A stretch of DNA of 64,000 nt from assembly GCA_965649825.1 (NCBI GenBank), contig OZ287713.1, positions 118,644-182,643 on the forward strand, read 5' to 3'. Below, one piece after another: positions 1-64,000 of this stretch (within the stretch, counting starts at the first letter, position 1; every line of letters starts with the position of its first letter). A program made the position numbers and the translations under genes. A model generated the notes under the pieces. The model was given only the letters and a program-made list of their open reading frames with translations. It was not told the origin of the DNA and made no database searches. This stretch comes from Penicillus capitatus (lineage: Eukaryota > Plantae > Chlorophyta).

Positions 1-438
1 AGGCAGGCACGAGCCTTTCTGTGCCAGAGACTCAGGCGCAGACTTGGCGAGGAACGCATCTTCCGAGACATGGGCGCATCGGACTCGCGCCTCTCCCGGT
101 CGGCGATGAAGGAGATGCTGAGAGCATGGTACATGCAATCGGGCGATGGTCAGGGGGAGGACGACTGGGACAAGGATGACGCGGCGCAGAAGTGGATGGA
201 ATCCGAGAGCGGTCGCAACAGAGTCTCGGCCGGGCTCATGTCTCTCCGTTCCGCTGTCGCCTCTCGCCAAGTGCACGAGATGCTTTCATCTGCCGAAGGG
301 ACTGCCGGTCTGATCGACGCACTGAGAGCCGCCGCACAGCGGGATCCGCAGATCAGAGACCTGCTGCAGAATATGCAGTGCCCGGGGCCCGCATTGCGCG
401 GAAACGATGTCGAACCTGTGGAACATCGGGACGGTTAA
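1..438 (+). CDS. ACC1: 3' end (last ~145 aa, C-terminal carboxyltransferase region) of a homomeric acetyl-CoA carboxylase; 5' part lies outside the window
   Basis: Frame open from base 1: RQARAFLCQRLRRRLGEERIFRDM...SRSAMKEMLRAWY...WDKDDAAQKWMES. This matches the plant/algal ACC C-terminus as I recall it (W..SR.FFY.RLRRR...KS.M.LI..W....W.DD..F..W). TAA at 436-438. Confidence 0.8.
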   Translation, partial: RQARAFLCQRLRRRLGEERIFRDMGASDSRLSRSAMKEMLRAWYMQSGDGQGEDDWDKDDAAQKWMESESGRNRVSAGLMSLRSAVASRQVHEMLSSAEGTAGLIDALRAAAQRDPQIRDLLQNMQCPGPALRGNDVEPVEHRDG

Positions 439-652
439 ATCGTGCAGTGAATACAAGCATCTCGTACGTAGCATTCGCCAACGTTCGTTTTCCGGTTTTC
501 GGCTTTTAATCATCGTGCGATACCTTTCCCCGAACCTCCTGTAGACAGGGTTCGCGAAGGCGGTGGGTATTACTTCTTTACACGGGTCCATCCATCGTGC
601 TAAAGGCATTCTTTATTGGCCTTCTGCGGCAATTCACTTGCGGTTTGCCCCC

Positions 653-1651
653 ATGGAGATTGTGCACGAACCGGCAGTCCGCGGCCGCTTAAACGCCCTT
701 GTACAAATGTTCGAGAATCAGTCGAAGTCGGAGGAGCCGACGAGCACTGCACCGGCTGCTCGTCAGAAGAAGCTTCCATCCTCTAAGCTCCAGCCTGCAC
801 GAGTATGTGAGCCGAGCCATGCGGCCGAGGCAGACGGAGAGAAGCGCCACGTGGACACGTCGTGCTCAGTGAACTCGCTAATAAAGACATTCAACTCCCG
901 GGAAGGAACGGGGAGTTCGCTCGCCGCGGCAAAGAGGTGTTCGCTGAGTGGAGAGCAGCGTCGAAGATCAGGAGTTCTTCAGCATCTCGCCCCCGAATCG
1001 ATTGAGCGGCATCCCGAGGTGAAGGCCCTCCTGGATGACGTCTTCGGCAGGATCGAGCAACGCTTCATCAGGATGCGCAGCTTTGATTCGCGGTGCAGTT
1101 CTGAGAGAGACCTCATCGATGACGCAGGGAGCTCCATGACAGACACAACGGACATCGATTCCTGTCTATCCGCAGCGGAGACGCATTCCTCGAGCGGCAG
1201 CAAGATCGGGGCGATCTGGAACCAGGATGCGCTTCAGCATCTGGACGGCTGTTCCAGGACAGACGCAGCCGGGTCGGATGTTCACCACATCTGCACAAAG
1301 AAGCTGCGCGACTACATGGACGTGCTGAGCGCACGCATGGCCTGCTCCCGGGATGCCAAGCCGTCCGCGACGGACGAAAGCGCAGCCGTCTTCAGCGATG
1401 CCGTTAAGCTGGCGATGTCGAAGCTGAACGGCGACGCCACCAGGGATGCCTCGATGGCCGACAAGTCCGTGGACGTTTCTGTCCGAACCTGCAAGGCGCT
1501 GATCGAGATGACCGTCTTCAGAGAAGAAGCCCTCAAGCCGACGATCAACGTCGTCAACCGGGCACCGTGTGTCATGGAACACGACGACCTGAGCGACGTC
1601 GACGCTCGCGTGCTCTTCGCGGCCGACCGCCTCTGTACGACGTCTCCTTAG
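653..1651 (+). CDS. Hypothetical protein (~332 aa, apparently intronless, Ser-rich and disordered N-half)
   Basis: Long ORF 563-1651 with first ATG at 653. Composition looks coding, but I recognise no family. Confidence 0.6.
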   Translation: MEIVHEPAVRGRLNALVQMFENQSKSEEPTSTAPAARQKKLPSSKLQPARVCEPSHAAEADGEKRHVDTSCSVNSLIKTFNSREGTGSSLAAAKRCSLSGEQRRRSGVLQHLAPESIERHPEVKALLDDVFGRIEQRFIRMRSFDSRCSSERDLIDDAGSSMTDTTDIDSCLSAAETHSSSGSKIGAIWNQDALQHLDGCSRTDAAGSDVHHICTKKLRDYMDVLSARMACSRDAKPSATDESAAVFSDAVKLAMSKLNGDATRDASMADKSVDVSVRTCKALIEMTVFREEALKPTINVVNRAPCVMEHDDLSDVDARVLFAADRLCTTSP

Positions 1652-2212
1652 ATAGCAGCGTCCGAATTGTACCATCCTCTCCTCGATCTGGGCAGAGGAC
1701 TCCCATTTTCCCCGTCTGCAAGATAAGGGTGCTCACTCAAAGTAACCGAGATGCACCTCAAAGCGGTTTTCGTCGCGGTCTCAGTCCGCCACACGGTTTC
1801 GTGTCAATTCTTCGTCTCTTGATTCTGTTTTCCTTTACGTTTTTGTCCGTGAGCTTTCGCTATTCCTCGATATCGGTCGACAAGAGAATTTCGTCAGACA
1901 TCAATGTTCAAGGCTCCTCTTTTCCGCTTCAAGATCTATAAACACATGCACGGCCTGAGGAGATCTCTGTCAGTCGGCTGTCGGGCTGGTTGGTTGAGGA
2001 GTCTGTCTAGTTTCAGATGGTGTAGATGATAAGTCAGAACGGTGCATGAGCTGTCCAGCACTGATAGTCTCAATACTGGGTGGTGTCCGAGAATGTGGTT
2101 TTTGAACACCGAAAAAAAAAACACATAGACGACAATCTCTTTTCCGAGCTGTGGGTGCTGCAGTTGAAATTGTATTTCATTCGAGAACACCGACGACTCT
2201 GCTTCCCGCGTC

Positions 2213-3053
2213 ATGCTCAGACGGGCCCTGCGTAGAGCAGTCGATGTCAGTGCCATCGCCGCCGCCAGTGGCAGACGGACGCTGTCGTCGTGGCGTCGAA
2301 GTGGAGGATACGTCGCCGGACCTTCCGGAGATGCGGTGCTCTATGGTCTGATCGGCGCCAACGCTGCCGTCTTTGCCGCGTGGCACGTCGTGGACACGTC
2401 GTTCATGCTGCGCCATTTCACGGTCTCGTTTCCGAATCTCGAAGGCGGCCGCGTTCACACACTCGTCACCCACGCGTTCTCGCACATGAGCCTCCTGCAC
2501 ATGGGCACCAACCTCATCGCCCTGTACTTCTTCGGAGGGGCGCTGACGCAGATCATGATCGGCAGAAAGGTCCGCAAAGGGCCCTCGTCTCCCGGAGGCT
2601 CCCCTGCCTGTGTAGTTGCTGAATCTGTACTTGATCGGCGGCGTCACGTCAGCGACAGCCGATCTGTTCTGGAAGGCCAGGCTGACCAAACAGAGCGCCG
2701 ATGCGTGGAGCTCGAGAATACCTTTGCGCGATCTCTACCGTAGGCAGCAGCTGCGAGACATGCCATCTCTGGGAGCCAGTGGCGCCGTCAATGCCGTCGT
2801 CTCACTCTTCTGCTGCACGTTCCCAAGGGAGATGATCTATCTGTACTTTGTCATTCCCATCCCTGCCTTCCTCCTCGGCGTCCTCTTTGTGCTGCACGAC
2901 TTCTCCAGTCTCAAGACACAGGTCACCTCTCTGCAGAGGACGGTGCTCAGCTGATTCGCCGTTGCGTCGCAGGACAACGTGTCCCACGCCGGACACTTGG
3001 GCGGCGTGGCAGTGGGTCTACTCTACTTTCTACGCATGAGATACCGCTTGTAA
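2213..3053 (+). CDS. Rhomboid-family intramembrane serine protease (PARL/RBL12-like, probably mitochondrial); 3 exons
   Basis: HAFSHMSLLHMGTN, SLGASGAV (catalytic Ser) and VSHAGHLGG (catalytic His) motifs. Arg-rich presequence. Two GT-AG introns of about 45-50 nt. Confidence 0.92.
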
Positions 3054-3097
3054 ACATTAACCGCATTCGAGAGGGTAACAGTCTGTTCAGCATCATC

Positions 3098-3873
3098 TTA
3101 ACAACGAGCCCATGTCCTTAGTGGTCGGAAATCCCAGCATTCTTGCAAAATTGAAACGACTGTGTACAGCATAGCTGCGCGCAGACGTATAGGAGTGTTG
3201 GATCTTCCTCGCGGCCACACCAAACCACGTGTCCTGTAAGCGAGTACGAGTTCATGGAGAAAGTCAGAGTCGGCCATCCGGCAGTACTCGCCCAGCTTCC
3301 ACGAAGAAGCACAATCAAATAGACAGATCTAGGCGACCGTAGGAAAGTCAGAGAAGAGAACGGGGTGGAGATACGTCGTCATTCATGTATCCCTAATAGA
3401 GTCAGTTAGATCAATGAAATGCACAACGAGTGAACGGCAGAGTGCTCTCCCTCGACTGCAGGGAGGCTGTCTAAGCAAACGGTCCGCGGAAACGATGTAA
3501 CTCATCAGACGTCAACGGTCCTGTAAACGAGAGCTGTGGCGGCTGCCTGAAGACAAGATCACGTTTTCCGAGATGCGAAGCGGAGACGCGGCAGACGTAC
3601 CTGGTCTTCTTTGCGCTGCGCGCTTCGGTGGAGTAACTTCTCGACGTCGAACCTTCTGTGCTTTTGCTGCGGACCTTGGATGTCGGCGCCTGTGGAAGCG
3701 ATGCAGATGTTGCGCCCTTGGTGAGATTCTCTATTGATTGCACGAATGTCTTTTGCACGTCTCTCTTGCGCAGCAGAGGTCCGAAGTACTAGGGATGTGG
3801 GATGTCAAGGCGATGGGGTGACGCGACGGAGGGGTACCTTAACGACCAGACGAACTTCTTGGGCAGTCGACAT
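3098..3873 (-). CDS. Hypothetical multi-exon protein (MSTAQEVRLVVK|YFGPLLRKRDVQKTF...)
   Basis: ATG at 3873. Several GT-AG-bounded segments join open frames down to TAA at 3098-3100. No family recognised; exon structure uncertain. Confidence 0.35.
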
Positions 3874-4052
3874 CTTCGACAAACTTCTTCTGTGCCGCTC
3901 GAGGTTCGAAAAAATAAAAAACGAAAGATGCAGCGAACAAAGTATAAACACCCAACGACGGAATCGCAACGAGGGAGTTGACGCCGTATTTATACGCGTG
4001 ACACGTGTCAGAATGTCAACGCGTCGTGGCTCGGACGCGACGAGCTGTCACA

Positions 4053-4656
4053 TCAGAGGACATCTTTGAGCGTGCCATGCACAACGGTGTAGGGAGATAT
4101 AGTCCTAGAGGCAGCTCAAATCGGACAAGAAGGGATCTGGACGGAGGATGCACCATTTGCAAACTAGGCCATTCTTGTTGTATGGGTCTGATCTGGCATA
4201 GGCCTCTATCTCCTGCACAGAGGTGATCTTTGTGACACGGTTCGGCGTCAGCATTACGTTACCTCAGTGGTCGCGTCTTTAAAAATCAGCATCCCATTTG
4301 TTGCACTCTCACCCATTGCCCCCGCAAGCACCAGCTTCCCTTCGGCTTCCTGCCATGCCAGCAGATCAGATGGAACTGCTGAAAGAGGGAAGCCGCCGAC
4401 CTTGTCTGCAGCCTGTTTCAGATGCTCTTCGCGATAGGGGGTTCTCTTCTCGAGCATGCCCTCGACGAATTCGTAATGCAGGACTCTTAGTACTTTGGCC
4501 CCTGGTGCGGTCTGCAGACACAGACGCGTTTTGGATTTGAAAGCGCGATTGCGGTGTGTCTGTGCTGACGGCGTGCATGGCCCTTGGAGGAATGCACTGG
4601 AGCCGTTTTGTGTTTAGCCGGAGAAAAGAACGGCTGAGGAAACGGACGGAGTGCAT
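4053..4656 (-). CDS. YciI-like (YCII-related domain) protein with probable organellar presequence; multi-exon
   Basis: Spliced: LHYEFVEGMLEKRTPYREEHL...LVLAGAMG...GMLIFK...EIEAYARSDPYNKNGLV.KW, matching the YCII pattern (R...R..HL; DPY). Confidence 0.85.
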
Positions 4657-5147
4657 TAGATGAAGGCTTCTGGAATCGCATAACGTATTGCCAGTGGGTA
4701 CGGGAACCGCATCGATAGACGACCGGCAACTTTCTTGCCGCGTTGCTCTCCGTTAGCAATCTTCATCGAGTCCCGTCGTCTTACTCCACAGGGAGAAATC
4801 TATCTTTCAGTGGAATCTCTGCCAGCCTTCTGTAGAGGAAGGAGGATGTCGGAGAGAGGTCAAGGAAGTATGTTTTCGTTGATTGAGGTCGGGAGGAACA
4901 GTATGACTTTATAACAACATGTGTAGGGAGGACGGCATCAAGTGTCTGGCCATGGACGCTTCACAGTCCGTTTGCTTCATTCCTAACCAGAAAGACTCCA
5001 TCAGTCGTGTAGATGATCCGACGAGAAACGCATCGTAGATGCGCACCCAGACGCGAGGTAATGAGCAATTACTCGTTAGAGGAACGGCGATACTGTCCGC
5101 TAACGTGCGAATTGTCGATCGCCTTTTTCCCCTTCGCGGCAGCCAAA

Positions 5148-8100
5148 ATGCAACGCACGACAACGCCGGTCGATCAGTCGCTTTCGGCAAAAGGCACCGA
5201 AGCCGAAAAAGTGGTCAAGCCAGCGGAGAAGACGTCGATCCGGACGCTCGATACGAGCAATGTACCTTCTGGTCACACCGTTCGTTTCGTCGGAGGACAC
5301 GCCATCGTCTTCCCCGGCGTGCCGTATTCCGTGCAGCTCCCTTACATGGAACGCGTGGTCCGAGCCCTTGACGGATCAGAGAACGCTCTACTGGAGGCCC
5401 CCACCGGTGTGGGAAAGACCCGCGCTCTGCTCTGCGCCTCTATGCAATGGCTCCTGGACGAACAGAAAGCATACAGCGAGAGACTACAACAGCATTTGCT
5501 GTCATCCAGAGAAGCTGCTGCCGGCATACCCAATTCAGCACCCGCACCATCCGTGCCCGAAAAGACGGAGACTGAAAACGACGAAGGCGTGACGGAGTCA
5601 GCTGTTCAGGGGGACGCTAAGGCAGAAACGGAAGATATGGGTCGGTCTGCGACGATCTGTTCGGAATTGTGGTGATGTGCTGTCTTCAGATGCTTCTGTG
5701 TGTTCTGCGGCGCTGAGGGATAGCCTGTGGAGCTTTTCCTGTTCTTCTCCGAACAGACACACTAAACGACTGTATTCGGCCATTCATTCCGATCAGCCGA
5801 TCGCCGATCGCGGCCAAGATATGAAGATAGAAGATGATGGCGCGGATTCGGGGAACATCTGCAGATCAGACAAGAAAATCAAATGCGAGGTTAAGTGTTG
5901 CACGAAAACAGGTGATCGACTGTCCTCCGCTATGTGGAATATGATGTGACAGCTGATTGCAGAAGTGGACGACATCAAGCCATCGTCCTCTCCGGAAGGA
6001 GGCTTCCTCAAAGTACCATACGAGACGAAGTGCCGTTTGTTGAGGAAACTCTTTTGCAGCAAGAGACCGGCGATGTCAAGACAGAGCAGCAGAATCTCGG
6101 CGACATGAAGGCGGAAGCTGCGAAGGCCGAGATGACAGATGCAGAGAGTGTGCAGATCTTACATCGCATCTGGGCCCATCTGGATGGCGATCAGGGGAGA
6201 ACGGGACAGTCTTCTGTCGTCCGTGCCCCTCCGCGGTTGGAAGGGAGCCAAGATCATCGCCCCGAGAAATCTATCTTCAGGCGTCCACGGATCTTCTATG
6301 CCACCCGAACGCACTCCCAGCTCACACAGGCGAGCATTGCCACCGCAGTTCCTTCCATTTCTCATCGAGGGTGATCAGATTGTGGATGAACTCAAGAGAA
6401 CGAGCTACCGTCCAAAGATGGCGATCTTGGTGCGTGGGACGACAGCGCGAAGCAGCGGGGTATACGCAGGAGTGTCTGTAGGGCGCCCGACGGCACTTTT
6501 GCATACACCCAAATGTCAAGAAAGAGAAAGATGTCGATGCTGCCTGCAACGCGTTGCGCAAAGGCAAGATAGGCGACGAGGACAAGATAGGCAGCTGCTG
6601 TGACTTCTTTGTCAACACTGTGCGGATGCGGACGGAACCTGATTGGCCAGTAAGGTCCAGCTGATAGGAGTCGACATCTCTCACTGCTGCGCCGGCGATG
6701 GCGTGCAGATTGAGGATATTGAAGACTTGAAGGCTGGATGCGAGAAAAGACGCCTGTGTCCGTACTACCTCTCTCGAATGCGTAAGGCCAGCGCTGACCT
6801 CATCCTCAGTCCTTACAACTATCTCATCTCGCCTTCGATACGAAAAACTCTGGAGATTGAAGTCGGCGGCGCAGGGATCATATTGGATGAAGCACACAAC
6901 ATCGAAGACGTCAGCAGGTTTGGCCCCTTTCTGTGGCGAGAATCTATGAGATCGTGGACGGACGGTCCTTCCGCAGAGACGCAGCCAGTTTTGAATCGGA
7001 TTTGGAGAAGCTCCATCTTGCTCGAAAGTCTTTCGAGAGCAAAGGGGTATTCTACGAGGGCCACGACATCGCCAACTCTTGCGGCGTGCTGGAAGGAGCT
7101 CTGCAAGGCATCGTGACATTCCTCTGCGATTTTCTCCCCGGAGGCATAAACGCATTCTCCTGATACATTCATTCTGCCTCTCTCTTGTATTTAGGGAAAG
7201 AGGCGGCAGGCAAAGGTCGCAGTGGCTTCGAGTACGAGAAGATCTTCAGCGCTTCCGAGGTTGCTATCTCAAGAGTAGACGGATGCACAGAACGTCTGTG
7301 TTGCGAAGGCGATGGGTCGATTGGAGGATTGTGGATGGGGGACATCCGAGCTGCCGGTCATTGACCATGCGTACACCTCGATTCAAGAATTAGAAGAGCC
7401 AAAGCCAAAGGACGCCATCACCGAACAGGAGGAGTTAAAAGAAGCGCGCCGCCGTGACAGTACATTCGAAGCATCGTCCAACTTTCCCCCGACGCGACAG
7501 GGATGTCTTTTTCAGATGTGGATGTCACCGGAGGTCTGAATCTGATCCGGCAGCTCCGGACGACGCTGGATATGATGTACAAGGTCAGTACGCGTATCTG
7601 TGCGATCGTCATTGATGTCGCGACTTTAGGGACCGGTGCACTTTACAGAGGCATTCGCGATGTGCATTCAGGTTCGGAGATCGTCCGGTAGTGGAGGATC
7701 TCGGAGGAAGAGCATTGGGGCGCAGTTTGAAGTCCGACTCTGCATTTGGTGCATGCACGCCGCCGTCTCTTTCTCACAGGTCCTCACTCCAGACGTCACA
7801 TCACGTGCTGCTGAGACTGTCTGTTCCTCAGGTCGCCCGAGTGTGCCGTTCCGTCATTCTGACCTCCGGAACGCTCTCTCCGCTTTCCTCCTTTGCATCG
7901 GAGCTCGGAACAGAATTCAAGTTTCGACTGGAATCGCGTCACGTGGTGGACATGGAGAAGCAGGTGGTCACTCTGTAAGACACAGAATCCGGCCGCCAAA
8001 AGTGTGAGATAGGTGTGGGCCAGTGCATGCAATGTGGATCCGCACGGCATGGAGATCCGCTGTACATTCCAGAACATGAAGCACGAGCATCTTAAGGATC

Positions 8101-9492
8101 GTATCGGAATGGCACTGCAGCAATGGTGCTCCTGCATTCCAGATGGCGTCTTGGTCTTCTTTCCGAGTTTTCGCACCATGGACACGCTCTTTGATCGATG
8201 GAAGGTATGCAGCAAACCATCTCCTTCAGATCTCGTAGAAGGGTTCGTAGCAAACTGGGCAGTACAAGAGACTGGAAACGCTCAAAAGAGTTTTCTGCGA
8301 AGAGAGAGCAGGGGGAGAGGACTTTGACGATCTAGTGCAATCGTACTATCGATGCATCGACAATGGCAAAGGGGCGCTTTTCTTTGGCGTCTGTCGTGGA
8401 AAAGTGAGCTATTTGATCTGGGGGAATGATCAGTTTATTCTCGTGCTCCTAGGCATCTGAAGGTATTAACTTTGCTGACGGCTACGCTCGCAGCGTTGTT
8501 ATGATCGGCATTCCCTATCCGGCGGTCATGGATCCCAAGGTCACTCTTTCTCACTCTTTTGTGCGAAAGACACGGGCAGGAGATGGTTAGGTGAAGTTGA
8601 AGAAGGAGTACAATTCGAAGTGGGCGTATCGCCTGGGGCTCTGCGATGGAGGTATCTGGTACAGTCAGCAAGCATTCAGGGCGCTCAATCAAGCCATTGG
8701 CCGATGCATTCGGCACAAGAACGATTTCGGTGCCATTCTTCTGTTGGATTGCCGTTACTCTGAGGCCGGTCGATTGAAGGACGTCTCAAAATGGGTGTCC
8801 TCCGCAATGAGGATAAGCAATGGCTTTGAGCTCATGATGGATTCGGTCAAATCCTTCTTCGCTAGTAACAGCCAAAGAATGCTCAAGCACGAAACGGGAC
8901 CATCGCTCACGACCAAACCGGAAGCCAAAGCCTCTCTGCCATCCCAGGGAGTGCCTGACGAAGATCAGGATTCTAAGAGCAATGTCGCGTCGGCACAGGA
9001 TGTGCATTTGGCTGGAACTCGGGATTGCTCGTTGACGCAGGTCCGACCCCACGAGCCAGAATCCACACTGCAGAAATGCTTGACGGGTTTCGAGCGCCTC
9101 ATCGAGGCGACGAAGGATCGTGATATCGAACTCTTTACTTGTTACATTGCCGAAGCTGGATGCATCGATCGAAATCGGCGAGACCTTGTTGATCAGGTCT
9201 CGTATGCCAATCGATGCTCACGGACTATCGATCTGTGCGTCTTGCTGCGTAGGCTGCCAGAAGATGCATCATGGACTGCCTTTGGCTCTGTGAAGACAAC
9301 GCAGAGAATCTGTCCACCTGGTTGCGAAACTGGCGTCACGTTATACCCACCGGCCTGGCAGCACTGCTTCAGCTGAAGGCCATCGCCACGAACTTCCCCA
9401 TAGATGCCTTGGTTCAAAAATGGAGTCTCACAGGACAGGGTTCTCTCAAGAATGCCTTACAAGTACAGTGTCCCTATCTTTGCTTCCAGTAA
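5148..9492 (+). CDS. FANCJ: FANCJ/BRIP1-like Fe-S DEAH helicase (Rad3/XPD family); many short introns
   Basis: LLEAPTGVGKT (motif I), YATRTHSQL, CPYYLSR, LSPYNYL, IILDEAHNIED (motif II), WCMHAAVSFSQ...ILTSGTLSP, GVLVFFPS, SEGINFAD, GIPYP, QAFRALNQAIGRCIRHKNDFGAILLLD. The segment before ILTSGTL looks closer to FANCJ than RTEL1. Confidence 0.9.
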
Positions 9493-10130: not shown

Positions 10131-10172
10131 TCGTTTGATTTTCGTACAAACCTTTCGGCGGTTTTATCGAAG

Positions 10173-53439: not shown

Positions 53440-53444
53440 TGTAA
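53440..53444 (+). terminator. Candidate TGTAA polyadenylation signal downstream of PRA1
   Basis: TGTAA about 70 nt after the TGA stop. Confidence 0.35.
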
Positions 53445-54514: not shown

Positions 54515-54991
54515 TCAGGCCGGGAGGTAGTTCCTCTCTCCCGTCAGTGGCACCTGGACCACGTAGCATATGAGGGGCACACCATTGAGGTCTGATGCGC
54601 GTATGACAGCATTGTAGACGCCGCGTACGAAGAAGAGCGGCACAACCCGGGAGTACTTAATGGTCACTTCTTCGCCCTTGCGGAAGTTGCATTCGTCCTT
54701 GAGGCCCAGAATCTCGCAGAAATCGCCGTTCTCAGTGTAGAACGGCACGAACCTGCGAAATGCGCGGCGCTTCACAACGACGCTGTACGTCCCTCCTGAT
54801 ACGTCTCGGGTCGAGACTCCTGTGACCGTGAAACGCATTTCGTTTCCTCGTGTTATCTTGTCATCTTCCAGGTACACTGTCCCCGATGCCACCGCGGGGG
54901 AACCACAGTCTTCCATCTTCAACTCCGTACGCGCGAGTGCACCCGTCGCCAACGCGCAGAGAACGAGAAATGAATAGAAGGCACGCAGCAT
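54515..54991 (-). CDS. ML-domain (MD-2-related lipid recognition, NPC2-like) secreted protein, copy A; intronless
   Basis: Signal peptide, EDCGS, FCE...EC, VP.F..RG.Y......DLNG.PLIC; 158 aa. Confidence 0.85.
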   Translation of the reverse strand: MLRAFYSFLVLCALATGALARTELKMEDCGSPAVASGTVYLEDDKITRGNEMRFTVTGVSTRDVSGGTYSVVVKRRAFRRFVPFYTENGDFCEILGLKDECNFRKGEEVTIKYSRVVPLFFVRGVYNAVIRASDLNGVPLICYVVQVPLTGERNYLPA

Positions 54992-55093
54992 TGCAGAAGT
55001 GTTCTTCCTGAGTCAAAAATAACAGAAGCTCAAATGACAGCCAGGTAGGTAGGTACCAACAGCACTAGTGCAAGGATGATGATGCGCCACGTA

Positions 55094-55576
55094 TTAAACG
55101 ACAAATTTTAGGGATGATGTGCTTTTAATCAAATCCAAAGGAAAACGGACGCAGGTAATGAGATTCTTTTCAGAGTCCCAGGCTTCAAACGTCGCCTCGT
55201 AACGTCCTTTCGGTGCAAATGGGGGAACGATATGTGAGAAGGCTAACGTCACGACCTTTCCTGACGTCAGCGAACAGTCGTCTTCAGTGACGAGCTGACA
55301 GATGCTTGTTTCTGGGAGTTTGAGCGTAATCGGTCGACCGAAGATCTTCCTTGTTGCGCTCAGGCGATAGGTGGCTTCGCCGATGTCTTTGGAGACAACG
55401 GCGGTCGAGGTGGCCGTCACCCTTCGGCCTCTCTTCAGGACATCGGGCTCCTGCGAAATGCTGACGATTTTGAGGACAGTCGATCCACAGTCGGTTATAT
55501 TCATTTCGACGCTCGCATGGACGCACTTCGCCATGCAGAGGGACGCGACGACGCAGAGAAAGAAAACACGCGACAT
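55094..55576 (-). CDS. ML-domain (NPC2-like) secreted protein, copy B; intronless
   Basis: Signal peptide, TDCGS, ICQ...DC, IVPPFAPKGRY......DSEKNLITCV; 160 aa. Confidence 0.88.
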   Translation of the reverse strand: MSRVFFLCVVASLCMAKCVHASVEMNITDCGSTVLKIVSISQEPDVLKRGRRVTATSTAVVSKDIGEATYRLSATRKIFGRPITLKLPETSICQLVTEDDCSLTSGKVVTLAFSHIVPPFAPKGRYEATFEAWDSEKNLITCVRFPLDLIKSTSSLKFVV

Positions 55577-55637
55577 CTTCGAACACCGCTGCCACGGCGA
55601 ATGGTTCCGTCAATAAATACGATGACTGTCCCATCGT

Positions 55638-55710
55638 GACAGTCCATTTGTAAGCGCGACAATCCATTTGTAAGCGTGACAGTCCATTTGTAAGCATGAC
55701 AGTCGATTTG
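55638..55710. repeat. Tandem 20-bp repeat, ~3.5 copies, consensus GACAGTCCATTTGTAAGCRY
   Basis: gacagtccatttgtaagcgc / gacaatccatttgtaagcgt / gacagtccatttgtaagcat / gacagtcgatttg, with no spacers. Confidence 0.9.
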
Positions 55711-55720
55711 GCGGTGTGAG

Positions 55721-56916
55721 ATGGCGAAGGGCAAACAAACGCGGATTGCTTCGCCAAGTGAAAATCCGTCCGCCTGAGACTGTCCACTGCGAGATGGGAT
55801 GTCCTTCCAGGGTGGCAGCATCCGTTCGTCCATGTCTTCCGGCATTTCTGCGTTGACCGAAGCGAGACTGCCCTGACGAGTGATGTGAAGAGTGTCATGG
55901 TAGTGGGACGGGCAGACTGTGGGGTCGATGCAGAGACTGCTGTTTGCTTCTCAGGACAAGACGATCGGCAAACGCGTCTGGCAGCTTCAGAGCGCCGTGA
56001 GCGTCGCGCCGTACATTCGACTGCCGACGTCGCCGTCCGAATCCTTGGGTCTCGAAGGTCGCTTGTGCTACATCCAAGTGCGGTCGCCTGTCTCTTCGCC
56101 TCGGCACGCACCACCCTCTGCAGGTGTTCGTCTACAGCGGATTGGAGTTTCTGTTGTATCTGGATTGTGAAGCTTCTCCTCATAGCCTTGCGGCTAGTTC
56201 TTTATGGATCGTAACTTGTTGTCGATTTAAGCCTTCCAGCGATGTGCCCTGGAAAGTCGCCGCTCTATCGACCCCTCGTGCTGTTCTCCGCTTCCTTCCC
56301 CTTCTTTTGACCGAGATGCGTCCTGTTGGAGGAGCTCTTCACCGGCTGTCTCGACTGCCTCTTCGCACACCTCCCAATCCATCTTCTCGTCTCTGCAAGA
56401 CAACTTCAGTGATGCCGTTGCGCTGTCCCAATGACGCGCTCTCTTCCTCCTTCCGTCCTACCACTCCTCGAAGTGCTTCACCGCTACTCAACAAAGGTTC
56501 GCTGTAATCAGCGACAATCCAGCTAGAGCTTGATGTGGTCGAGCATGATTCGCCGATTTAGCACCAGGGCACCTATCTTACCTACCATGAGGTAGTGGTA
56601 GACGCTTTCTAGTCTCTTCAATGGCTTTGGGCTTGGCGTCCGCTTGGATCTGCATGAGGTCTGCCTTGCTTCCACCTGTCCCCGACGTGGAGAAAGCGAG
56701 ATGTTCGATTTTTCGGACGAAATCGTGCACAAGAGCTGCAGAGACCCTTCTGTCGCCGAGGACTACCTTTTTCCTGCAATTGCCTCGATTTTTTCGCCTC
56801 CTACAGCGCCTCGGACATTCGAGGTCCACCTGTGCAGTCTGTTCCTTTTAGCGTGCGAACTATTATCTGCAATTAAAGAGCATGGCAGTAAAAGAATAAA
56901 TGGATTGATACCTTAG
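55721..56916 (+). pseudogene. WDR90/POC16-like N-terminal CFAP20 (DUF667) domain without WD40 repeats; truncated gene or pseudogene
   Basis: Spliced: RWQHPFVHVFRHFCVD...SDVKSVM|DKTIGKRVWQLQSAVSVAPYIRLP..PSESLGLEGRLCYIQ|VF...EFLLYLDC. This matches the WDR90 N-terminus as I recall it (WQHPFLNVFRHF...DKT...SV...YIQLP....SLGL.GRY). The downstream frame becomes hard to follow; 3' end uncertain. Confidence 0.6.
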
Positions 56917-57669
56917 CTTCTTCTGTTGCCAATTTTATGTTGTCAAAGCCCTTAAATCCATTGGCTCTGTAGTCTTTTGACAGGTCTATCTTTTCACATC
57001 TGCACATCGTTCGAAAATCTTCGGATCGCATTGTGCACCATGTTTTCTGGGTAGTCTTTATCGACGGCCGTGCCGCGCACGAGAGCAAACTCAGCAGAAG
57101 TCTTTACACGTTTAGAGCAAGATCCCGAAGGTTTAGATTCGTCGATTTATACGCGCATGACGACATGACTTTCTAAGCAGTAAAGTCAGCATGCCCCTGG
57201 AGATAGAGAAAAGAGGTCACTTTACTGTCCACAAACCGTTTTCCCGAGGAGGGCTCTCGATTACTAAAAGAGGTCGACAGAAAGTCACATTACTTGTTTT
57301 ACACAAGAATGTGCGATTATTTGTTTATTCCAGAATGCACTTTGAGAAATTAATGAATGCGTAGCCACGAACTTCGGCGCTATGAAGAATTAATTCTCAC
57401 GAAAAAGAAAAAAGTGACGATCTCGGATCGGCGAAACGTATATTGGGTTCATGGATGGACTTTTGTCCAGATTTTCGACTTCGCATTGCCGATTACAATG
57501 AGCGCGATAGTGCGAGTTCAGACAACCGTGCTTTTTTGTAAAGGATGGAGGTTTTCGTGTTGACAAACCCGGTAGGCGTCAGTCACATCAAGCAAGATAT
57601 GACCATCCGCAGTTCGACCTGCATTTACGCCTCTCGCTTGTACGGCATCCCACTGCACGCTTCTAGGCG

Positions 57670-58175
57670 ATGGGGAACAAGAAAAACAAACAGCGCCGTC
57701 GAAGGGAGTTCGAATCTCGTCACGTGGATCAGCTTTGGCGAGATGTTCGCAAACCTCCGACGGACGTCGTTTCCGGCACCACCGGACCGATCGGCACGAC
57801 CGACAAGTACCGACGCAACGCACGCGCTCGTTCCTCACGTTCTCGTGTCCAGAGCCAAACTGGACGAAGACATCCCGGGCAGCGGCAAACACTACTGCAT
57901 CCCCTGCGGGTTCTCCTCCAGTCCACTCAATGCTTATTTTTCACAGACCTCTCGACGCTGTTCTTGACAGACGTTATTTCACCGACGGGGAGAGCCTTTC
58001 GCGTCACGAGACATCCAAACTTCACAAGAAACGCGTCAAGCTTCTGAGACATGGCATCCCTCCGCACGACAGCGCCGCCGCCGGCGAGGCTGCCGGGAAG
58101 GGACCTGTCGACAATGGCCCACGACTTCGTCCGCATCGCACCGTCACACCGTCCACGCATTTAACAGCCACCTAA
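57670..58175 (+). CDS. BUD20: BUD20/ZNF593 C2H2 zinc-finger pre-60S factor; 3 exons
   Basis: RHVDQLWRD, LDEDIPGSGKHYCIPCGRYF.....L.RHETSKLHKKRVK.L...PH...EAAG.G. Confidence 0.92.
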
Positions 58176-58266
58176 CTTCGCAAACACATCACCGTTTCCT
58201 TCGTCGACCAGGCGAGTCGTCACACGAACAGTCGCCATCCTCAAATGTCCGTCGTACGGTGGTGAC

Positions 58267-61200
58267 ATGCAACCCTCGACGTCATCCAGTGCGCTGTTTC
58301 GTTCGAGCAGCGATCGAAAAGGTGTTCCCCGTCGCATCACGCGTCTGGCGCAATGCGTCGAAGCATTCGCCAGCGAACGCGGCGGCGGCGACGCCATCAA
58401 CAGGTCACACTGTCCGCGACGACTCCATCCGCGACAAGCTCTTTTGCTGCAGCATACTGGTCGCCAACAACGGCCTGGCAGCGGTGAAGTTCATCCGGAG
58501 TGTGCGAATGTGGGCCGTTCGTGCGTTCGGCGACGATCGAGCCGTCACGCTGGTGGCCATGGCAACGCCTGAAGATATCCGAATCAACGCCGAGCACGTT
58601 CAGCTGGCGGATCAGTTCGTCGAAGTGCCGGGCGGAACGAACAATAACAACTATGCCAATGTCCGCCTCATTCTGCAAACGGCAGAGCGAGCAGAGGTCG
58701 ACGCCGTATGGCCAGGATGGTGATTATCACTCCTCGCATCTCTGGGCTTCCCACGAGGGCGGGGCTGTCGTGCAGGGGACACGCATCCGAGAATCCGGAT
58801 CTCCCGAGGGCTCTGAGCGAAACGCAGCGTGGAATTCGATTCCTGGGACCGCCGTCCGGGGCGATGGCGGCACTTGGAGACAAGGTTGTGCTCCCCCACC
58901 TCATGTCGTGCTCACCAGGTGCCTCGGTCTCAGGTCGGTTCGACGATTCTGGCTCAGGCGGCCGGCGTGCCCACGTACCCCTGGAGCGGAACCGGAGTGC
59001 AGATCTCCTACGAGGAATGCGACGGCGTCATTCCGAAGGAGATCTACGAGCGCGCCTGCCTCCAGGCAGAGAATGCCGTGCATCGTTGTCGGGCCATCGG
59101 CTACCCCGTCATGCTCAAGGCCTCGTGGGGAGGCGGAGGAAAAGGGATACGGACGGTGAGATCGGAGGCCGAAGTGGAAACGCTTCTGCGACAGGTCCGA
59201 ACGAAGATGCATCTCTCCTGAATGCGACTGGCACTACTGCGTGCTAGGTCGAAGGAGAGGTGCCCGGCTCGCCCATCTTCGCCATGAAGCTGGCATCCAG
59301 ATGTCGACATCTGGAGGTTCAGCTGCTCTGCGACCGCCACGGAAGTGTCTGCTCTCTCTTCTCCCGGGATTGCAGTCTCCAGCGCCGTCATCAGAAGATC
59401 GTCGAGGAGGGACCTGTCCTCGGTGTCGCATCGGCCATCCTGGACCAGATGGAAAGGTGCATCTTCACGCTGCGATGTGGCTCTGCGGAATAACAGCGCG
59501 TCTGGCTGCAGATCTGCCCGTGCCCTGGCGAGGTCGGTGGGGTACGTCGGCGCAGCAACGGTCGAATACCTGCACAGCGTGGAGGAGGGGCGCTACTACT
59601 TCCTGGAGCTCAATCCGCGGCTCCAGGTAGAGCACCCGGTCACCGAGGGCATCACGGGAGTGAATCTGCCTGCGTGTCAAGTGATGGTCGGCATGGGCAT
59701 CCCGCTGCATCGCATTCCCGACATCCGCGTCCTCTACCGCGAAGACCCTCAAGGAGACAGTCCCATCGACTTCGAGGCCCACGAGAGGCGGAATCCGGAT
59801 GGGTACGTCGTGGCCGTGCGCCTGACCTCGGAGAACGCCAACGATGGATTCAAACCGACGTCCGGCAACGTCGACGAAGTGCACTTTCGACCGACGTCGG
59901 ACGTCTGGGGGTACTTCTCGGTGAAGTCCGGAGGGGGAATTCACGAGTTCTCGGACTCGCAGTTCGGCCACCTCTTTGCAAAGGGCCCGACGCGTCAGGA
60001 GGCCATCCGATCGATGCTCATGGCGTTGAAGGAGGTGAAGATTCGGGGTGAGATACGCACGACGGTCGACTACATCATCGACATGATCCAGGAGCCGGAC
60101 TTCCTCGAGCAGCGCATCCACACGGCGTGGCTGGACAACCGCATCGCCCGACAGGTGACGGAGATGCAGAGAGTGCCCCTCTGAGTTCGTTTCCTGTATT
60201 CAGATCACGTCCAAGCGTCCCCCCTGGCACCTGGCGCTGGTCTCCGGGGCCGTCGTCAGAGGAATGGAAGCCTTCGCCGGGAGGTCGGCCGAATACCTGG
60301 AGATGTTGAAGAGGCGCCAGATACCTCCGTCGTCGCTCAGTCTCACGCGGCTGGAGGAGGAACTGGTGCTGGACGCGACGAAGTACAGCGTGGCGTTGCT
60401 CAAACAGGGTCCCCATCGTTATCGTGTGCTGCTGAACGGCTCGGCTCTGGACTGCGTGGCGAGGAGACAGGCCGACAGCGGCGTCTTGCTGCAGGTTGAC
60501 GGACAGAAGCACGCCGTCTACGCGGAGAACGAGGCGATGGGCGCTCGGCTGTCCATCGATTCGTGGACGTGTCTCCTGGCGAACGAGTCCGATCCTTCGC
60601 AGGTCTTGGCGCCCTCCGCTGGAAAGATCCGTCGCTACCTGGTCGAGGACGGGACGCGTCTGGAGCTGGGCGATCCCTACGCCGAGCTCGAGGTGATGAA
60701 GATGCTGATGCCGCTGCTGGCGCCTGCGGCCGGAACTGTGCGCTTTCAGCTGCCAGAAGGCGCCGTCCTGAACTGCGGAGAGCTCATCGCCAGGTCCGTC
60801 CATCCAGCGGCAGGGACGAGAAGAGACTGCTGTTGCGCCTAGGTTGGAGCTGGACGATCCCAACGCCGTCTCGACAGTCGCGGTCAGCGAAGAGAAGTTT
60901 CCGGAAGAGCTCGGTCCTCCGCAGGTTATCAGCGAACGCGTCGATGATCGATTCGCCCTGGCCCACGAGGCCGCTGCCGATCTCCTGGCCGGATACGAGC
61001 GCGACGTGCCTGCCACGGTCGCGGAGCTTCTGAGCTGTCTGGACACCGAAGACCTGGCCTTCTTCTCGTGGTCGAGGAGATTCTCCGTGGCGCAGTCTCG
61101 GATGCCGGATCGCCTGAGGCGGGCCCTGGAAACGGTCATGCAGCGCCACGACAACTCCACCTTCGACATTGTCCCGGACGTCGCTGGCACGGAGTTCCCG

Positions 61201-64000
61201 GCCAGCGACCTGCTCCGGTGCATGAAGCAGCATATGGATCTCGAACCGTCCGCAGAGCGTCTTGCCCTCGAAGCCACACTCGAGCCACTCTTGTCCCTTG
61301 CCCGAGAGCACGAGGGCGGAGACTACATCCGACGCATCACTCAGAAGCTCCTCGAGCAGTACCTCTTCGTCGAGGAGAAATTCCAGCCCCAAAGCTTGGC
61401 CACCACAGAACGCGACATCATCTACGGCCTCCGACAGGTACGGAGATCACCCACCTGTCTCTCGGCAATGGCTCGGCGGTGCTGATCAGGAGTATGGGGA
61501 CGACCTTCAGGGCGTGCTGGATTTGGTGATGTCCCATCAGGCCCTCGAGAGGAGGTCGGAGTTCGTGCTGCGTCTGCTGGCTCACGTCGTCCTCCCTTCG
61601 CCTGCAAACTACCGTCCCCATCTGCGCCGTCTGTCGGCCCTCCACTCCTCCAACGCCGCCCAGATCCTGAAGAAGGCGCAGCGCCTACTCGAACAGAGTC
61701 TGTTGGCCGATCTGAAACAAGCCGTCCGTCGCTGCCTGTCCGGACTGGATCTCTTCTCTGCCGGCCCGGATCGGAGAGGACCGTCCGTCTCCAGAAAGGC
61801 CACTCGGACGGAGAGCCTCTACAAGGGGCTCGGCAGCGGAAGCCTGCCTCCGTCCACAATGGCTCAGGTGGAGATGCAGAAGATGGAGATGCTGGTCGAA
61901 GCTCCAGCCGCCGTCGACGACGCTCTTGCCTCGCTCCTGGGCCTTCCTCGAGTCCGCGTCCCCGAGGAGACACGATCCGCTTCGGATCACGTGGCGACGG
62001 CGGGCGTCGAGCACCGTACACTGATGGTCTACATCCAGCGAACGTATCATCACCGAATCCTCGAGGAGCCCGGAATCGTGCAGCACAGTCACTGCACAGT
62101 CGCCTCCTGGGTGTACGGCGATGTCTACGAGAAGGAGGTCGAGCACCACGGGGCCATGATTGTGCTCGAGCAACTGAATCACCTCAAAGAGGGAATGGAA
62201 ATTGTCAGACAAGCACTGGGCCAGCGCAACAGAACGACGACGTCCGGGTGTCTGCACATCGCACTGACAGGAGAATCGGGTGACCGATTCCGTCTCTTCG
62301 GCGAGGCGGAAGATCTCTGCCGCGGCGACATCGACGAGAGAGATGAGGCGAACGATCCCTTCGACGAAGACGAACGTGTTCGGTCGAGTCTGACAGACGA
62401 GGACATCACGCAACTGGCCTCCTCTCTGCGAGCACTGATCCAGACGATAACGGCCGAATGCAGAGCGATGGACTTCGACACGGTCTGCGTCGTCATTCAG
62501 ACGGCAAAGATCCCTGTGCGCAAGGGATACAGATGGGATTCCAGTCGTCAGCGCTACGCATCGCACTTCACTCTCCAGTGAGAATCGGATCTCTCCTGCG
62601 ACGATCGACGGGTGTGCTTCGCAGGCAGGTGGAGGGTCCAGTGGCCGAGGCACTGGAGCTCTGCAAGCTGGAGCATCTGCCGTTGCACCACGCGCCCTCC
62701 CGGAATCGCCAGTGGCACATCTACACGGTCGAGGAGAGAGCAGGGCGCGGAACGGTCATCAAGAGACTCTATCTCCGCGGACGGATTCATCAGATTGGCA
62801 ACACCCCTGAATTCCTGACGGCCTCCTACCGGGGCACAGCGGCGGACCTCGCTGCTGCGGTGGTGGACGAGATCGGGGGGACTCTGTCCCGATGTCTAGA
62901 GGAACTGCTGCGCGTGCAGCACGGAGAGGATGGCGACGGTGCGACGTCCATCGACTGGTCGCACATCTTCCTGTCGCTCTTGCCTTCCGTGGATATCGGA
63001 GAAGATGCGACTGGCAGTGTGGTGGCCGCTCTGCGCTCTGCATGCGCCCGGTGGACGAACCGACTCGCAGGCGATCTGCGCACTGCCTCCGTGGCCCAGA
63101 TCGAGTTGAGAATCTGCGCGGCCGGAGAAGCCGCTCCGTGGAGAGTCATCGCGTCCCTTCCCACGGGACAAGAGGCCGGAGACGAACACGTGGACGTCTA
63201 CCGCGAAGAACGATCTCCGGGAGGGCTTCGATACCGAGCCGTCTCGCAGCCGCCCGGCGCGTTGCATGGCCGCCCTGTTCTGCAGCCGTACGGGGCCCTG
63301 AGTGCTCTGCAGCAGAAGCGCCTGTTGGCTCGGAGACACGGCACCACGTACTGCTACGATTTCCCTGCAGTTTTCGCAAACGCTCTGAGAGAGATCTGGA
63401 CGGAGAGAGCTGTGGCAGGAGAGCCGTGCTCTACGCCGCCGCCCGGTGCACTCGTGGAAGCAGCGGAGCTCGGATTCGATGGACAGGACTCCCACGCGTC
63501 GCCCTACGCTTGGAAGCTGCGGAGGCTGCCTGAAGGATCTGAGCGTCTCGCTGTCGGCATGGTCGCGTGGACGATGACGGTCAGATCTCCGGAAGCTCCT
63601 GATGGACGCTCGCTCGTTGCCATCGCCAACGACATCACCCACCATTTCGGTGCATTCGGGCCGAAGGAGGATGCGCTCTTTCGATCCGCCGTGGAGCACG
63701 CGCTGGACCATCGCCTTCCGGTCGTCTACATCGCTGCCAACTCTGGAGCCCGCGTCGGTCTCGCCACGGATGTCGGGGAAAAGCTGAAAGTACAGTGCGC
63801 GCAGGCCGGAACTCGATTCACGTGCGACGGCTTTCTGTGCAGGTCGAGTGGACGTCGCCCGAAGACCCTCTCAGAGGACCTGCTTACCTGTACCTGGAGG
63901 ACGCCGATTACCAGCAGCTGACGAGCGGCGGCGGCGAGGGGCGCAACGCTCCTGCGGTCGTGGCCGAAAAGAAGAAGGGCCATTGGAGGATCACCGATGT
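58267..64000 (+). CDS. ACC1: Homomeric acetyl-CoA carboxylase (BC, BT, BCCP, central and start of CT domains); runs off the window end
   Basis: [98 protein letters not shown] (biotinyl Lys), [32 protein letters not shown]. Confidence 0.99.

What the first reader, a model, noticed from the sequence alone, without database searches (positions are those of the whole stretch)
1..64000. Window is bracketed by two halves of homomeric ACCase on the same strand: ~65-kb tandem unit, circular DNA, or two nearby paralogs
Seen: bases 1-438 encode an ACCase C-terminus ending in TAA. Bases 58267-64000 encode an ACCase from its start Met to early in the CT domain (WRITDV, just before the GVENL motif). Both are on + and both lie in visibly GC-rich sequence. 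Knowledge: plant ACC1 is ~2250 aa, so roughly 350-400 codons (about 1.1-1.5 kb with introns) separate the window's end point from the residue where base 1 begins. Inference: the geometry fits a ~65-66 kb head-to-tail repeat, or a circular amplicon carrying ACCase and ~30 other genes. Alternatives are two ACC paralogs ~58 kb apart or an assembly artefact.
Basis: partly seen in the sequence, partly recalled or inferred. Interest (0 to 1): 0.75.

Follow-up and report, generated by a model that had tools for sequence, protein, structure and literature searches.

The report
Two nearby duplicate ACCase genes
The window is ordinary nuclear DNA of an uncultured green alga that starts in one copy and ends in a second, about 98% identical copy of the acetyl-CoA carboxylase gene, because an 11.4-kb block was duplicated about 65 kb away on a long linear chromosome; it is not a 65-kb tandem unit or a DNA circle.

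Summary
Bases 1-438 (+) encode the last 145 residues and TAA stop of a homomeric acetyl-CoA carboxylase (ACCase). Bases 58267-64000 (+) encode residues 1-1740 of one, in 11 exons with ten 47-56-nt GT-AG introns.

A 303,401-bp linear metagenome contig (ENA ERZ25074695 ctg340218_34x_l), 99.3% identical to the window where the sequence is unique, runs past both ends and carries two complete ACCase genes on one strand.
- **Repeat:** the repeated block is only about 11.4 kb: about 1.1 kb upstream, the 7.4-kb ACCase gene, a 332-aa ORF and part of a rhomboid-like gene. The copies are 98.1% identical and 65,583 nt apart.
- **Spacer:** the roughly 54 kb between them is single-copy, and the outer flanks differ.
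- **Origin:** a related species (about 85% nt identity) is colinear with the left copy on both sides, so the right copy is the derived one.
- **State:** both copies splice to intact 2,295-aa ORFs (dN/dS 0.43).

Diverged block edges, a mosaic right copy and two ACCase versions on the relative's 1.23-Mb contig suggest an older duplication homogenised by gene conversion. This is ordinary biology: nearby duplicate ACCase genes, as in Arabidopsis ACC1/ACC2.

The parts
1..438 (+). 3' end of the last exon of the LEFT ACCase copy: final 145 codons and the TAA stop.
   Evidence: Open frame. ACCase CT-domain C-terminus in PDB. 35% identity over 134 aa to the Auxenochlorella ACCase C-end. 548/548 identical to the left copy on the 303-kb contig.
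1..3244 (.). The part of the LEFT duplicated block that lies in the window: ACCase tail, 332-aa ORF and rhomboid-like gene start. The block begins about 8.1 kb left of base 1.
   Evidence: L010 8615-19966 vs L011 8630-19966: 98.14% over 11,356 nt. L011 16722-19966 matches window 1-3244 at 98.8%. Sharp end at about 3244.
653..1651 (+). 332-aa ORF with no Pfam match, inside the duplicated block. Intact in both copies (2 aa differences).
2213..2954 (+). Rhomboid-like gene fragments inside the duplicated block.
   Evidence: PF01694 E 1.3e-6. Same Pfam hit on the ENA ORFs downstream of the ACCase gene: of the right copy (L011) and of the related species (L004).
3245..57127 (.). Single-copy spacer of about 54 kb holding ordinary nuclear genes: RAD3-type helicase C-terminal domain, P-type ATPase, class II DAHP synthase, AP2-domain ORF, sugar transporter, BTB, protein kinase, thymidylate kinase, mitochondrial carrier and two ML-domain genes.
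   Evidence: Precomputed Pfam on ENA ORF calls. No self-similarity in the window. ORFs at 6030-6371, 16178-17527 and 45845-46507 are in one-member clusters, at one place each.
57128..64000 (.). The part of the RIGHT duplicated block that lies in the window: about 1.14 kb upstream region plus ACCase exons 1-11 (exon 11 partial).
   Evidence: L010 8615-15493 matches window 57128-64000 at 97.9%. The first 688 nt of the block are only 90.4% identical between copies.
58267..64000 (+). RIGHT ACCase copy, codons 1-1740. Exons: 58267-58403, 58453-58719, 58776-58884, 58934-59194, 59248-59456, 59512-60154, 60204-60793, 60843-61437, 61490-62577, 62625-63789, 63843-64000. Exon 11 continues to about 65670 outside the window.
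   Evidence: Gene model projected and checked: no stops, all introns GT-AG. Pfam order on ORF fragments: Biotin_carb_N, CPSase_L_D2/Biotin_carb_C, ACCA_BT/Biotin_lipoyl, ACC_central, Carboxyl_trans.
58404..63842 (+). Ten very short spliceosomal introns: 58404-58452, 58720-58775, 58885-58933, 59195-59247, 59457-59511, 60155-60203, 60794-60842, 61438-61489, 62578-62624, 63790-63842 (47-56 nt each).
   Evidence: Same positions and GT-AG ends in the left copy and in the related species (46-55 nt there).

Best explanation
The window is a slice of a linear nuclear chromosome of an uncultured chlorophyte green alga. That chromosome carries a direct (same-strand) segmental duplication of about 11.4 kb.

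**Shown.**
- The block holds about 1.1 kb of promoter region, the 7.4-kb homomeric ACCase gene of 11 exons, a 332-aa ORF and the start of a rhomboid-like gene.
- The two blocks lie 65.2-65.6 kb apart, start to start, with about 54 kb of single-copy genes between them.
- The window happens to begin in the last exon of the left copy and to end in exon 11 of the right copy.
- The left copy sits in the ancestral, syntenic locus; the right copy is the derived insertion.
- Both copies encode intact 2,295-aa enzymes with identical N-terminal 252 residues.

**Inferred.**
- The short N-terminus has no room for a presequence, so both copies most likely make the same cytosolic enzyme. The duplication would then act as extra gene dosage or redundancy.
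- The duplication is older than its 2% core divergence suggests, and the core is kept similar by interlocus gene conversion.
For: **Both copies sit on one contig.** Look-up of the 71-aa ORF at window 58508-58720 returned two places on ENA ERZ25074695 ctg340218_34x_l (303,401 bp, linear): record 214721-234936 and 149153-169368.

**Extent of the repeat.**
- The copies are 98.14% identical over 11,356 nt, and the alignment stops there.
- Upstream of the left copy there is no similarity to the window.
- Downstream of the right copy, similarity ends near window-equivalent 3244-3614.

**The window matches the same locus.**
- It is 99.3-99.5% identical to that contig in unique sequence.
- It is 100% identical over 52641-64000 to ctg300865_10x_l, which continues through the missing 1,228 nt into its own ACCase tail.

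**The spacer is single-copy**.

**Polarity.** The related contig L004 is colinear with the left copy upstream (L010 353-3295 matches L004 1-2954) and downstream (window 1-8691 matches L004 12600-21269).

**Both genes are intact.**
- The same ten GT-AG introns give a 6,888-nt CDS with a single terminal stop in each copy.
- dN 0.011, dS 0.026, omega 0.43, below 1 with Fisher p 5e-5.
- Derived changes are symmetric, 22 on the left copy and 19 on the right.

**Signs of gene conversion.**
- The core is 98-99.8% identical but the block edges only 87-90%.
- The window's right copy matches the 34x left copy at 55 and the 34x right copy at 38 of the 96 codons that differ between them. It is 100% identical to the left copy over about 800 nt.
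- The relative's 1,234,723-bp contig length is listed for two different versions of every ACCase ORF.
- The left and right copies are equidistant from both of those versions.
Against: - No reads were available, so copy number and junctions rest on assemblies of a mixed-strain metagenome (contig names carry 34x, 16x and 10x tags).
- Only 250 nt beyond the right block's end were seen, so its true right boundary is uncertain.
- An omega of 0.43 is high against the 0.09-0.19 reported for angiosperm ACC genes (PMC9673162). One or both copies may be under relaxed constraint.
- The 10x-contig version of the right copy has four private single-base insertions in its last 450 nt. These would frameshift the tail if real.
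- An old duplication with conversion and two independent recent duplications are not cleanly separated.
- Cytosolic localisation is inferred only from the short N-terminus.
Confidence: 0.85

Rival explanations
1. The window is nearly one unit of a ~65-kb head-to-tail tandem array, or a ~65-kb circular amplicon (eccDNA) carrying ACCase and the other genes. The two ACCase pieces would then be one gene cut by linearisation.
For: The geometry fits. The right copy continues for 1,228 nt and then matches window 3-548 at 96.9%. The period is about 65.2-65.6 kb. The relative L004 has one ACCase gene whose upstream matches the window's right end and whose downstream matches its left end.
Against: - A 303-kb linear contig holds both copies with different outer flanks.
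- Similarity after the right copy ends at window-equivalent about 3.2-3.6 kb instead of running on.
- Interior ORFs occur once.
- The two copies differ at 188 sites plus 8 gaps.
- The window's tail matches the left copy 548/548 but differs from the right copies.
Confidence: 0.02
2. Assembly artefact: there is a single ACCase locus, and strain or haplotype variants were stitched into one contig as a false duplication.
For: The sample holds at least three related strains or haplotypes (contig names tagged 34x, 16x, 10x). The ACCase region shows about 2% divergence between contigs, against about 0.7% elsewhere. A 16-kb contig breaks just after the ACCase stop.
Against: - The copies are separated by 54 kb of unique sequence, unlike typical adjacent haplotig duplications.
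- The spacer-to-right-copy junction was assembled independently in the 34x contig, the 10x contig and the window.
- The left copy's two flanks are confirmed by synteny in another species from another sample.
- That species also shows two ACCase versions listed with one contig length.
- The edges of the block are diverged (87-90%), as expected for real paralogous boundaries.
Confidence: 0.05
3. The duplication is recent: about 2% old and lineage-specific, with no appreciable gene conversion. The relative's two copies would come from an independent event.
For: The left and right copies are each other's closest relatives and equidistant from both copies of the relative. Most left/right differences are private to one sequence. 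Intron and silent divergence are both about 2-2.5%.
Against: - Block edges are 10-13% diverged while non-coding parts of the core are 98-99.8% identical.
- An 800-nt stretch is 100% identical between the window's right copy and the 34x left copy, with shared derived residues at 1229-1263, 1732, 1879 and 2275.
- Two copies also appear in the relative, with a mosaic of 1% and 9% divergence between them.
Confidence: 0.25

Closest known systems
Arabidopsis thaliana ACC1/ACC2 (At1g36160/At1g36180): tandemly duplicated homomeric ACCase genes. The tandem arrangement (Yanai et al. 1995) is from my own knowledge. Repeated ACC duplications in Brassicaceae, Poaceae, Caryophyllaceae and Geraniaceae are in PMC9673162 and PMC4489017.
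   Same: Two full-length multidomain ACCase genes lie on the same strand, close together on one chromosome. They arose by duplication within the lineage, and both are retained as intact ORFs.
   Different: - Here the copies are about 98% identical and share the same N-terminus. In Arabidopsis the duplicate gained a plastid transit peptide and evolves faster.
- They are 54 kb apart rather than adjacent.
- The host is a chlorophyte alga.
- There are signs of concerted evolution.
Cytosolic homomeric ACCase of core chlorophytes (Auxenochlorella, Coccomyxa, Volvox, Trebouxia, Helicosporidium entries)
   Same: Same domain order. 55-68% aa identity in the N-terminal 936 residues. The C-terminal tail is alignable to Auxenochlorella. 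The N-terminus is short, with no room for a presequence.
   Different: No close relative with a name is on record: the best named hits are at most 68% identical. I know of no description of two linked copies in chlorophytes, but I did not survey their genomes.
   Same: A herbicide-target enzyme gene present in more than one copy together with neighbouring genes.
   Different: There is no circle, no amplification beyond two copies and no co-amplified 65-kb unit. The locus is a two-copy segmental duplication on a linear chromosome.

Membership tests
Homomeric (multidomain, eukaryotic-type) acetyl-CoA carboxylase | Biotin carboxylase domain at the N-terminus | tested here: met
   PF00289, PF02786 and PF02785 on ORF fragments of both copies. 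55-68% identity to algal ACCases.
Homomeric (multidomain, eukaryotic-type) acetyl-CoA carboxylase | Biotin carrier domain with the biotinyl-lysine motif (E/A)VMKM | tested here: met
   PF00364 and PF21385 hits. '[12 protein letters not shown]' is present in the spliced proteins.
Homomeric (multidomain, eukaryotic-type) acetyl-CoA carboxylase | ACC central domain followed by the carboxyltransferase domain, all on one polypeptide of about 2,200-2,400 aa | tested here: met
   PF08326 then PF01039. A single 2,295-aa ORF after removal of ten GT-AG introns, in both copies. PDB matches to CT domains.
Homomeric (multidomain, eukaryotic-type) acetyl-CoA carboxylase | Carboxylates acetyl-CoA to malonyl-CoA | not testable with these tools
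   Needs an enzyme assay.
Large head-to-tail tandem repeat (~65-kb unit) | The whole unit, including the interior genes, is present at least twice in series | tested here: not met
   Interior ORFs are in one-member clusters, at one place each. Only 11,356 nt align between the two regions.
Large head-to-tail tandem repeat (~65-kb unit) | Sequence after the right ACCase copy runs on into the equivalent of window 3.3 kb onward, and sequence before the left ACCase copy equals window about 48-57 kb | tested here: not met
   Similarity stops at window-equivalent 3244-3614. L010 1-8614 has no match to the window. Only 250 nt past the right boundary were visible.
Circular amplicon / eccDNA | The two ends of the ~65-kb segment join to each other and to nothing else | tested here: not met
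   Both copies are embedded in a 303,401-bp contig named linear, with distinct outer flanks. A minority circular form cannot be excluded without reads.
Segmental duplication evolving in concert (interlocus gene conversion) | Two copies in different genomic contexts | tested here: met
   The left copy's context is syntenic with the relative.
Segmental duplication evolving in concert (interlocus gene conversion) | Homogenised core with more diverged edges, and mosaic sharing of variants between paralogues | tested here: met
   Core 98-99.8% against edges 87-90%. The window's right copy is a patchwork of 34x left-type and right-type variants, with an 800-nt tract of 100% identity.
Segmental duplication evolving in concert (interlocus gene conversion) | The duplication predates the split from the related species (paralogues present at orthologous positions in both) | tested here: inconclusive
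   Two versions of each ACCase ORF are listed with a 1,234,723-bp contig length in the relative. Position and spacing could not be read because the look-ups were exhausted. The left and right copies are equidistant from both versions.

The most novel reading that the evidence does not exclude
The two 11.4-kb direct repeats, 98% identical and flanking 54 kb, are an active substrate for non-allelic homologous recombination. Some cells or strains of this alga would then carry a 65-kb deletion, a three-copy tandem array or an excised ~65-kb circle with a hybrid ACCase gene, giving ACCase copy-number polymorphism. The mosaic right copy shows that sequence exchange between the repeats does occur. 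No deletion, array or circle junction was seen, and no reads were available to look for one.
Probability: 0.05. Interest if true: 0.5.

Novelty: new member of a known kind. Interest (0 to 1): 0.2.

Why it matters
It removes an attractive but wrong reading: this is not an ACCase-bearing 65-kb amplicon or circle. What remains is a modest addition to a known theme. Homomeric ACCase genes have been duplicated repeatedly in plants; here this happened in an uncultured chlorophyte, and both copies are intact with the same N-terminus.

The pair looks kept similar by gene conversion, so it could serve as a small case study of concerted evolution in algal nuclear genomes. It may also bear on malonyl-CoA supply in an alga of possible lipid-biotechnology interest.

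It is a practical warning too. Identical gene fragments at the two ends of a fixed-size window do not imply circularity.

Tried and rejected
- **Searching with the 145-aa tail.** It gave nothing in the 5.8-billion-protein database or in viral, JGI metagenome and GTDB genome contigs. The window's source is therefore not in those collections.
- **Exact look-ups of guessed ORFs.** 653-1648, 563-1648 and 62458-63918 failed, as did 16 of 19 ORFs tried in cluster look-ups. The window differs by about 0.7% from the contig on record, and gene-caller starts differ.
- **The 192-aa biotin-carrier ORF.** It returned only the 10x contig.
- **The 64-aa ORF at 2760-2951.** It returned only the left copy, so sequence beyond 250 nt past the right block stayed out of reach.
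- **First pass of my codon-usage splice predictor.** It mis-set the first two or so intron calls per copy and jumped the 10x frameshifts with false introns. I fixed them by hand and by projection.
- **Codon usage and GC3 of the two ACCase pieces.** They are alike, but this cannot tell one gene from two.
- **An apicomplexan or chromerid origin**, suggested by GC content and the AP2 domain. Rejected because no alveolate appears among the top ACCase hits, which are chlorophytes.
- **Other negative searches.** There are no tRNA or Rfam matches, and no paper mentions the ENA accession.
Full report
**Observation.**
Bases 1-438 are a single open frame of 145 codons ending in TAA.
- A search of PDB sequences returned only acetyl-CoA carboxylase (ACCase) chains. 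All aligned at the extreme C-terminus of the carboxyltransferase (CT) domain (best E 4.8e-4).
- The piece aligns at 35% identity over 134 aa to the C-terminus of the Auxenochlorella ACCase (E 1e-17).

At the other end, three-frame translation of 57.9-64 kb shows ACCase sequence that switches frame repeatedly.
- The switches are canonical GT-AG introns of 47-56 nt.
- With ten introns removed, 58267-64000 gives 1,740 codons without a stop. They run from 'MQPSTSS...GVPRR...GGGDAIN|SILVANNG' to '...GHWRITD'.
- The closest proteins are chlorophyte ACCases at 55-68% identity. Land plants are at 50-52%.

The two pieces do not overlap, and the window contains no internal repeat. The window alone could therefore not decide between one gene and two.

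**Finding outside sequence.**
The tail found nothing in the protein database or in the viral, JGI-metagenome and GTDB contig sets. Exact-sequence look-ups then showed that two window ORFs (16178-17527 and 45845-46507) are on record on ENA ERZ25074695 ctg340218_34x_l. That contig is 303,401 bp and its name ends in '_l', read here as linear.
- It is 99.3-99.5% identical to the window in unique sequence, so it is the same species but another strain or haplotype.
- By its coordinates the window corresponds to about record 154.2-218.2 kb, reversed. That leaves about 85 kb to the left and about 154 kb to the right of the window. A 65-kb circular contig is thereby excluded.

**The right end.**
A search with the window's central/CT-start stretch returned the window's own ORF (P0123) and an 85%-identical ORF from another sample (P0124).
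- P0123 lies on ctg300865_10x_l (16,057 bp). Locus L003 from that contig matches window 52641-64000 at 100.000% and then runs 1,782 nt further.
- After 1,228 nt it matches window 3-548 at 96.9% and ends there.
- The right-hand ACCase gene therefore has its own 3' end and at least 110 nt of the same 3' flank.

**Both copies on one contig.**
The 71-aa ORF at window 58508-58720 is called identically at two places on the 303-kb contig. L010 is record 214721-234936, the left copy. L011 is record 149153-169368, the right copy.
- The two loci align over 11,356 nt at 98.14% (188 mismatches, 8 gaps) and nowhere else.
- The block starts about 1.1 kb upstream of the ACCase start codon (window-equivalent 57128).
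- It spans the 7.4-kb gene, an intact 332-aa ORF (2 aa differences between copies) and the start of a rhomboid-like gene.
- It ends sharply at window-equivalent 3244.
- In the right copy a 274-nt deletion between two 14-nt direct repeats follows, then 98 nt at 86.7%, then unrelated sequence.
- The start-to-start distance is 65,583 nt. In the window's strain it is about 64,000 + 1,228 = 65,228 nt.
- The 8.6 kb upstream of the left copy has no counterpart in the window.
- Interior ORFs at 6.0, 16.2 and 45.8 kb sit in single-member 90% clusters and occur at one place each.

The repeat is therefore an 11.4-kb block, not a 65-kb unit.

**Which copy is original.**
L004 comes from ENA ERZ26696514 ctg303746 (814,653 bp), a related species at about 83-86% nt identity.
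- It aligns to window 57455-64000, and after a 1,228-nt gap to window 1-8691.
- L004 is colinear with the left copy upstream (L010 353-3295 matches L004 1-2954) as well as downstream.
- So the left copy occupies the ancestral locus. The right copy is a duplicate inserted after the ML-domain genes.
- The 814-kb contig ends about 35 kb downstream of its ACCase gene, so it cannot show whether a second copy exists there.

**State of the genes.**
- With the same ten intron positions, both copies on the 303-kb contig give a 6,888-nt CDS (2,295 aa) with only the terminal stop.
- The introns are conserved in position and GT-AG ends in the relative.
- The copies differ at 54 residues. Only 2 fall among the first 600 residues; 37 of the 54 lie between residues 726 and 1459 (central region), and the CT region has about 15.
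- dN = 0.011, dS = 0.026 and omega = 0.43, below 1 (Fisher p 5e-5). Intron divergence is 10/512.
- Polarised with the relative, derived replacements are symmetric: 22 on the left copy and 19 on the right.
- The first 252 residues are identical. The N-terminus is as short as in presumed cytosolic algal ACCases, so I infer, but have not shown, that both are cytosolic isozymes.
- An omega of 0.43 is higher than the 0.09-0.19 reported for angiosperm ACC genes (PMC9673162). That is compatible with relaxed constraint after duplication or with unpurged young variants.

**Age and concerted evolution (inference).**
- The core of the block is 98-99.8% identical, non-coding parts included. Its left 688 nt are 90.4% identical and its right edge 86.7%.
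- The window's right copy is about equally distant (about 2%) from both copies of the 34x contig. It matches the 34x left copy at 55 and the 34x right copy at 38 of the 96 codons that differ between those two copies. It is 100% identical to the left copy over about 800 nt and shares derived residues with it in blocks.
- In the relative, the contig length 1,234,723 bp is listed for two different versions of every ACCase ORF. These differ by about 1% in the BC, BCCP and CT parts but by 9% in the central/CT-start part.
- The left and right copies here are equidistant from both of those versions.

Together this favours a duplication older than the species split, homogenised by gene conversion. Two independent recent duplications are not excluded.

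**Artefact check.**
- The sample contains several strains (contig names tagged 34x, 16x and 10x), so false duplication had to be considered.
- Against it, 54 kb of unique sequence separates the copies.
- The spacer-to-right-copy junction is present in three independent assemblies: the 34x contig, the 10x contig and the window.
- The left copy's flanks are confirmed in another species from another sample.
- The block edges look like old paralogous boundaries.
- The window's tail is 548/548 identical to the 34x left copy and differs from both right copies.
- Reads were not available, so this remains an assembly-level conclusion.

**Comparison with what is known.**
Duplication of the homomeric ACCase gene is well documented in plants. 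Poaceae, Brassicaceae, Caryophyllaceae and Geraniaceae each gained a second, plastid-targeted copy (PMC9673162, PMC4489017). In Arabidopsis the two genes lie in tandem (Yanai et al. 1995, from my own knowledge). Core chlorophytes are described as having a heteromeric plastid enzyme and a homomeric cytosolic one, and prasinophytes a homomeric plastid enzyme (PMC4489017, PMC6595918).

The present case belongs to the same kind, a nearby duplicate of the homomeric gene. It differs in four respects:
- the copies are nearly identical and have the same N-terminus;
- they are 54 kb apart;
- they show signs of concerted evolution;
- the host is an uncultured alga.

**Verdict.**
The finding is ordinary and of low interest. 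The only unexcluded exciting variant is recombination between the direct repeats producing copy-number variants or circles in part of the population. There is no evidence for that.

Noticed in passing
window 58404-63842 (ten introns); L004 and L010 equivalents: All ACCase introns are extremely short (47-56 nt, GT-AG). They are conserved in position in a species about 15% diverged, where they measure 46-55 nt. This hints at a genome with uniformly tiny introns, and the alga could not be identified.
   Followed up: partly
L003 12591-13142 (ctg300865_10x_l end), equivalent to window 3-548: The 10x contig's copy of the ACCase tail has 14 private mismatches and four private single-base insertions. 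They are absent from the window, from both 34x copies and from the outgroup. They are either contig-end errors or a frameshifted C-terminus of the right copy in that strain.
   Followed up: partly
L007 1321-6310 (ctg335405_16x_l), equivalent to window 51114-56165: A third contig carries a 5-kb segment 96.2% identical to the ML-domain region just upstream of the right ACCase copy. Its first 154 nt equal the reverse complement of L010 1-154, about 10 kb upstream of the left copy. The original duplication may therefore have included this segment too, with about 9 kb later lost or gained between it and the ACCase gene.
   Followed up: partly
window 56173-56177: The 34x contig has a ~340-nt insertion relative to the window (L005 reverse complement 11661-12001). 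A 20-nt x 3.8 tandem repeat lies nearby at 55635-55710.
   Followed up: no
window 3231-3244 and 3517-3530: A 14-nt direct repeat GTCCTGTAA(G/A)CGAG brackets the 274 nt that are missing from the right copy. This looks like a microhomology-mediated deletion at the edge of the duplicated block.
   Followed up: partly
window 33830-34459 (+): ORF with an AP2 DNA-binding domain (PF00847, E 2.7e-15). Just after it comes a ~4-kb stretch of low GC content (0.41-0.45, about 34.5-38.5 kb) with no long ORF.
   Followed up: no
whole window compared with ENA ERZ25074695 contigs: The window is not identical to any single contig on record. It is 100% identical to the 10x contig over 52641-64000, 100% to the 34x left copy over 1-548, and 99.3-99.5% to the 34x contig in between. 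Several closely related strains or haplotypes of this alga coexist in the sample.
   Followed up: partly
window 1-438 and 58267-64000 compared with the rest: Both ACCase pieces have markedly higher third-position GC (0.66-0.79) and a more similar codon usage than most neighbouring ORFs in the window.
   Followed up: no
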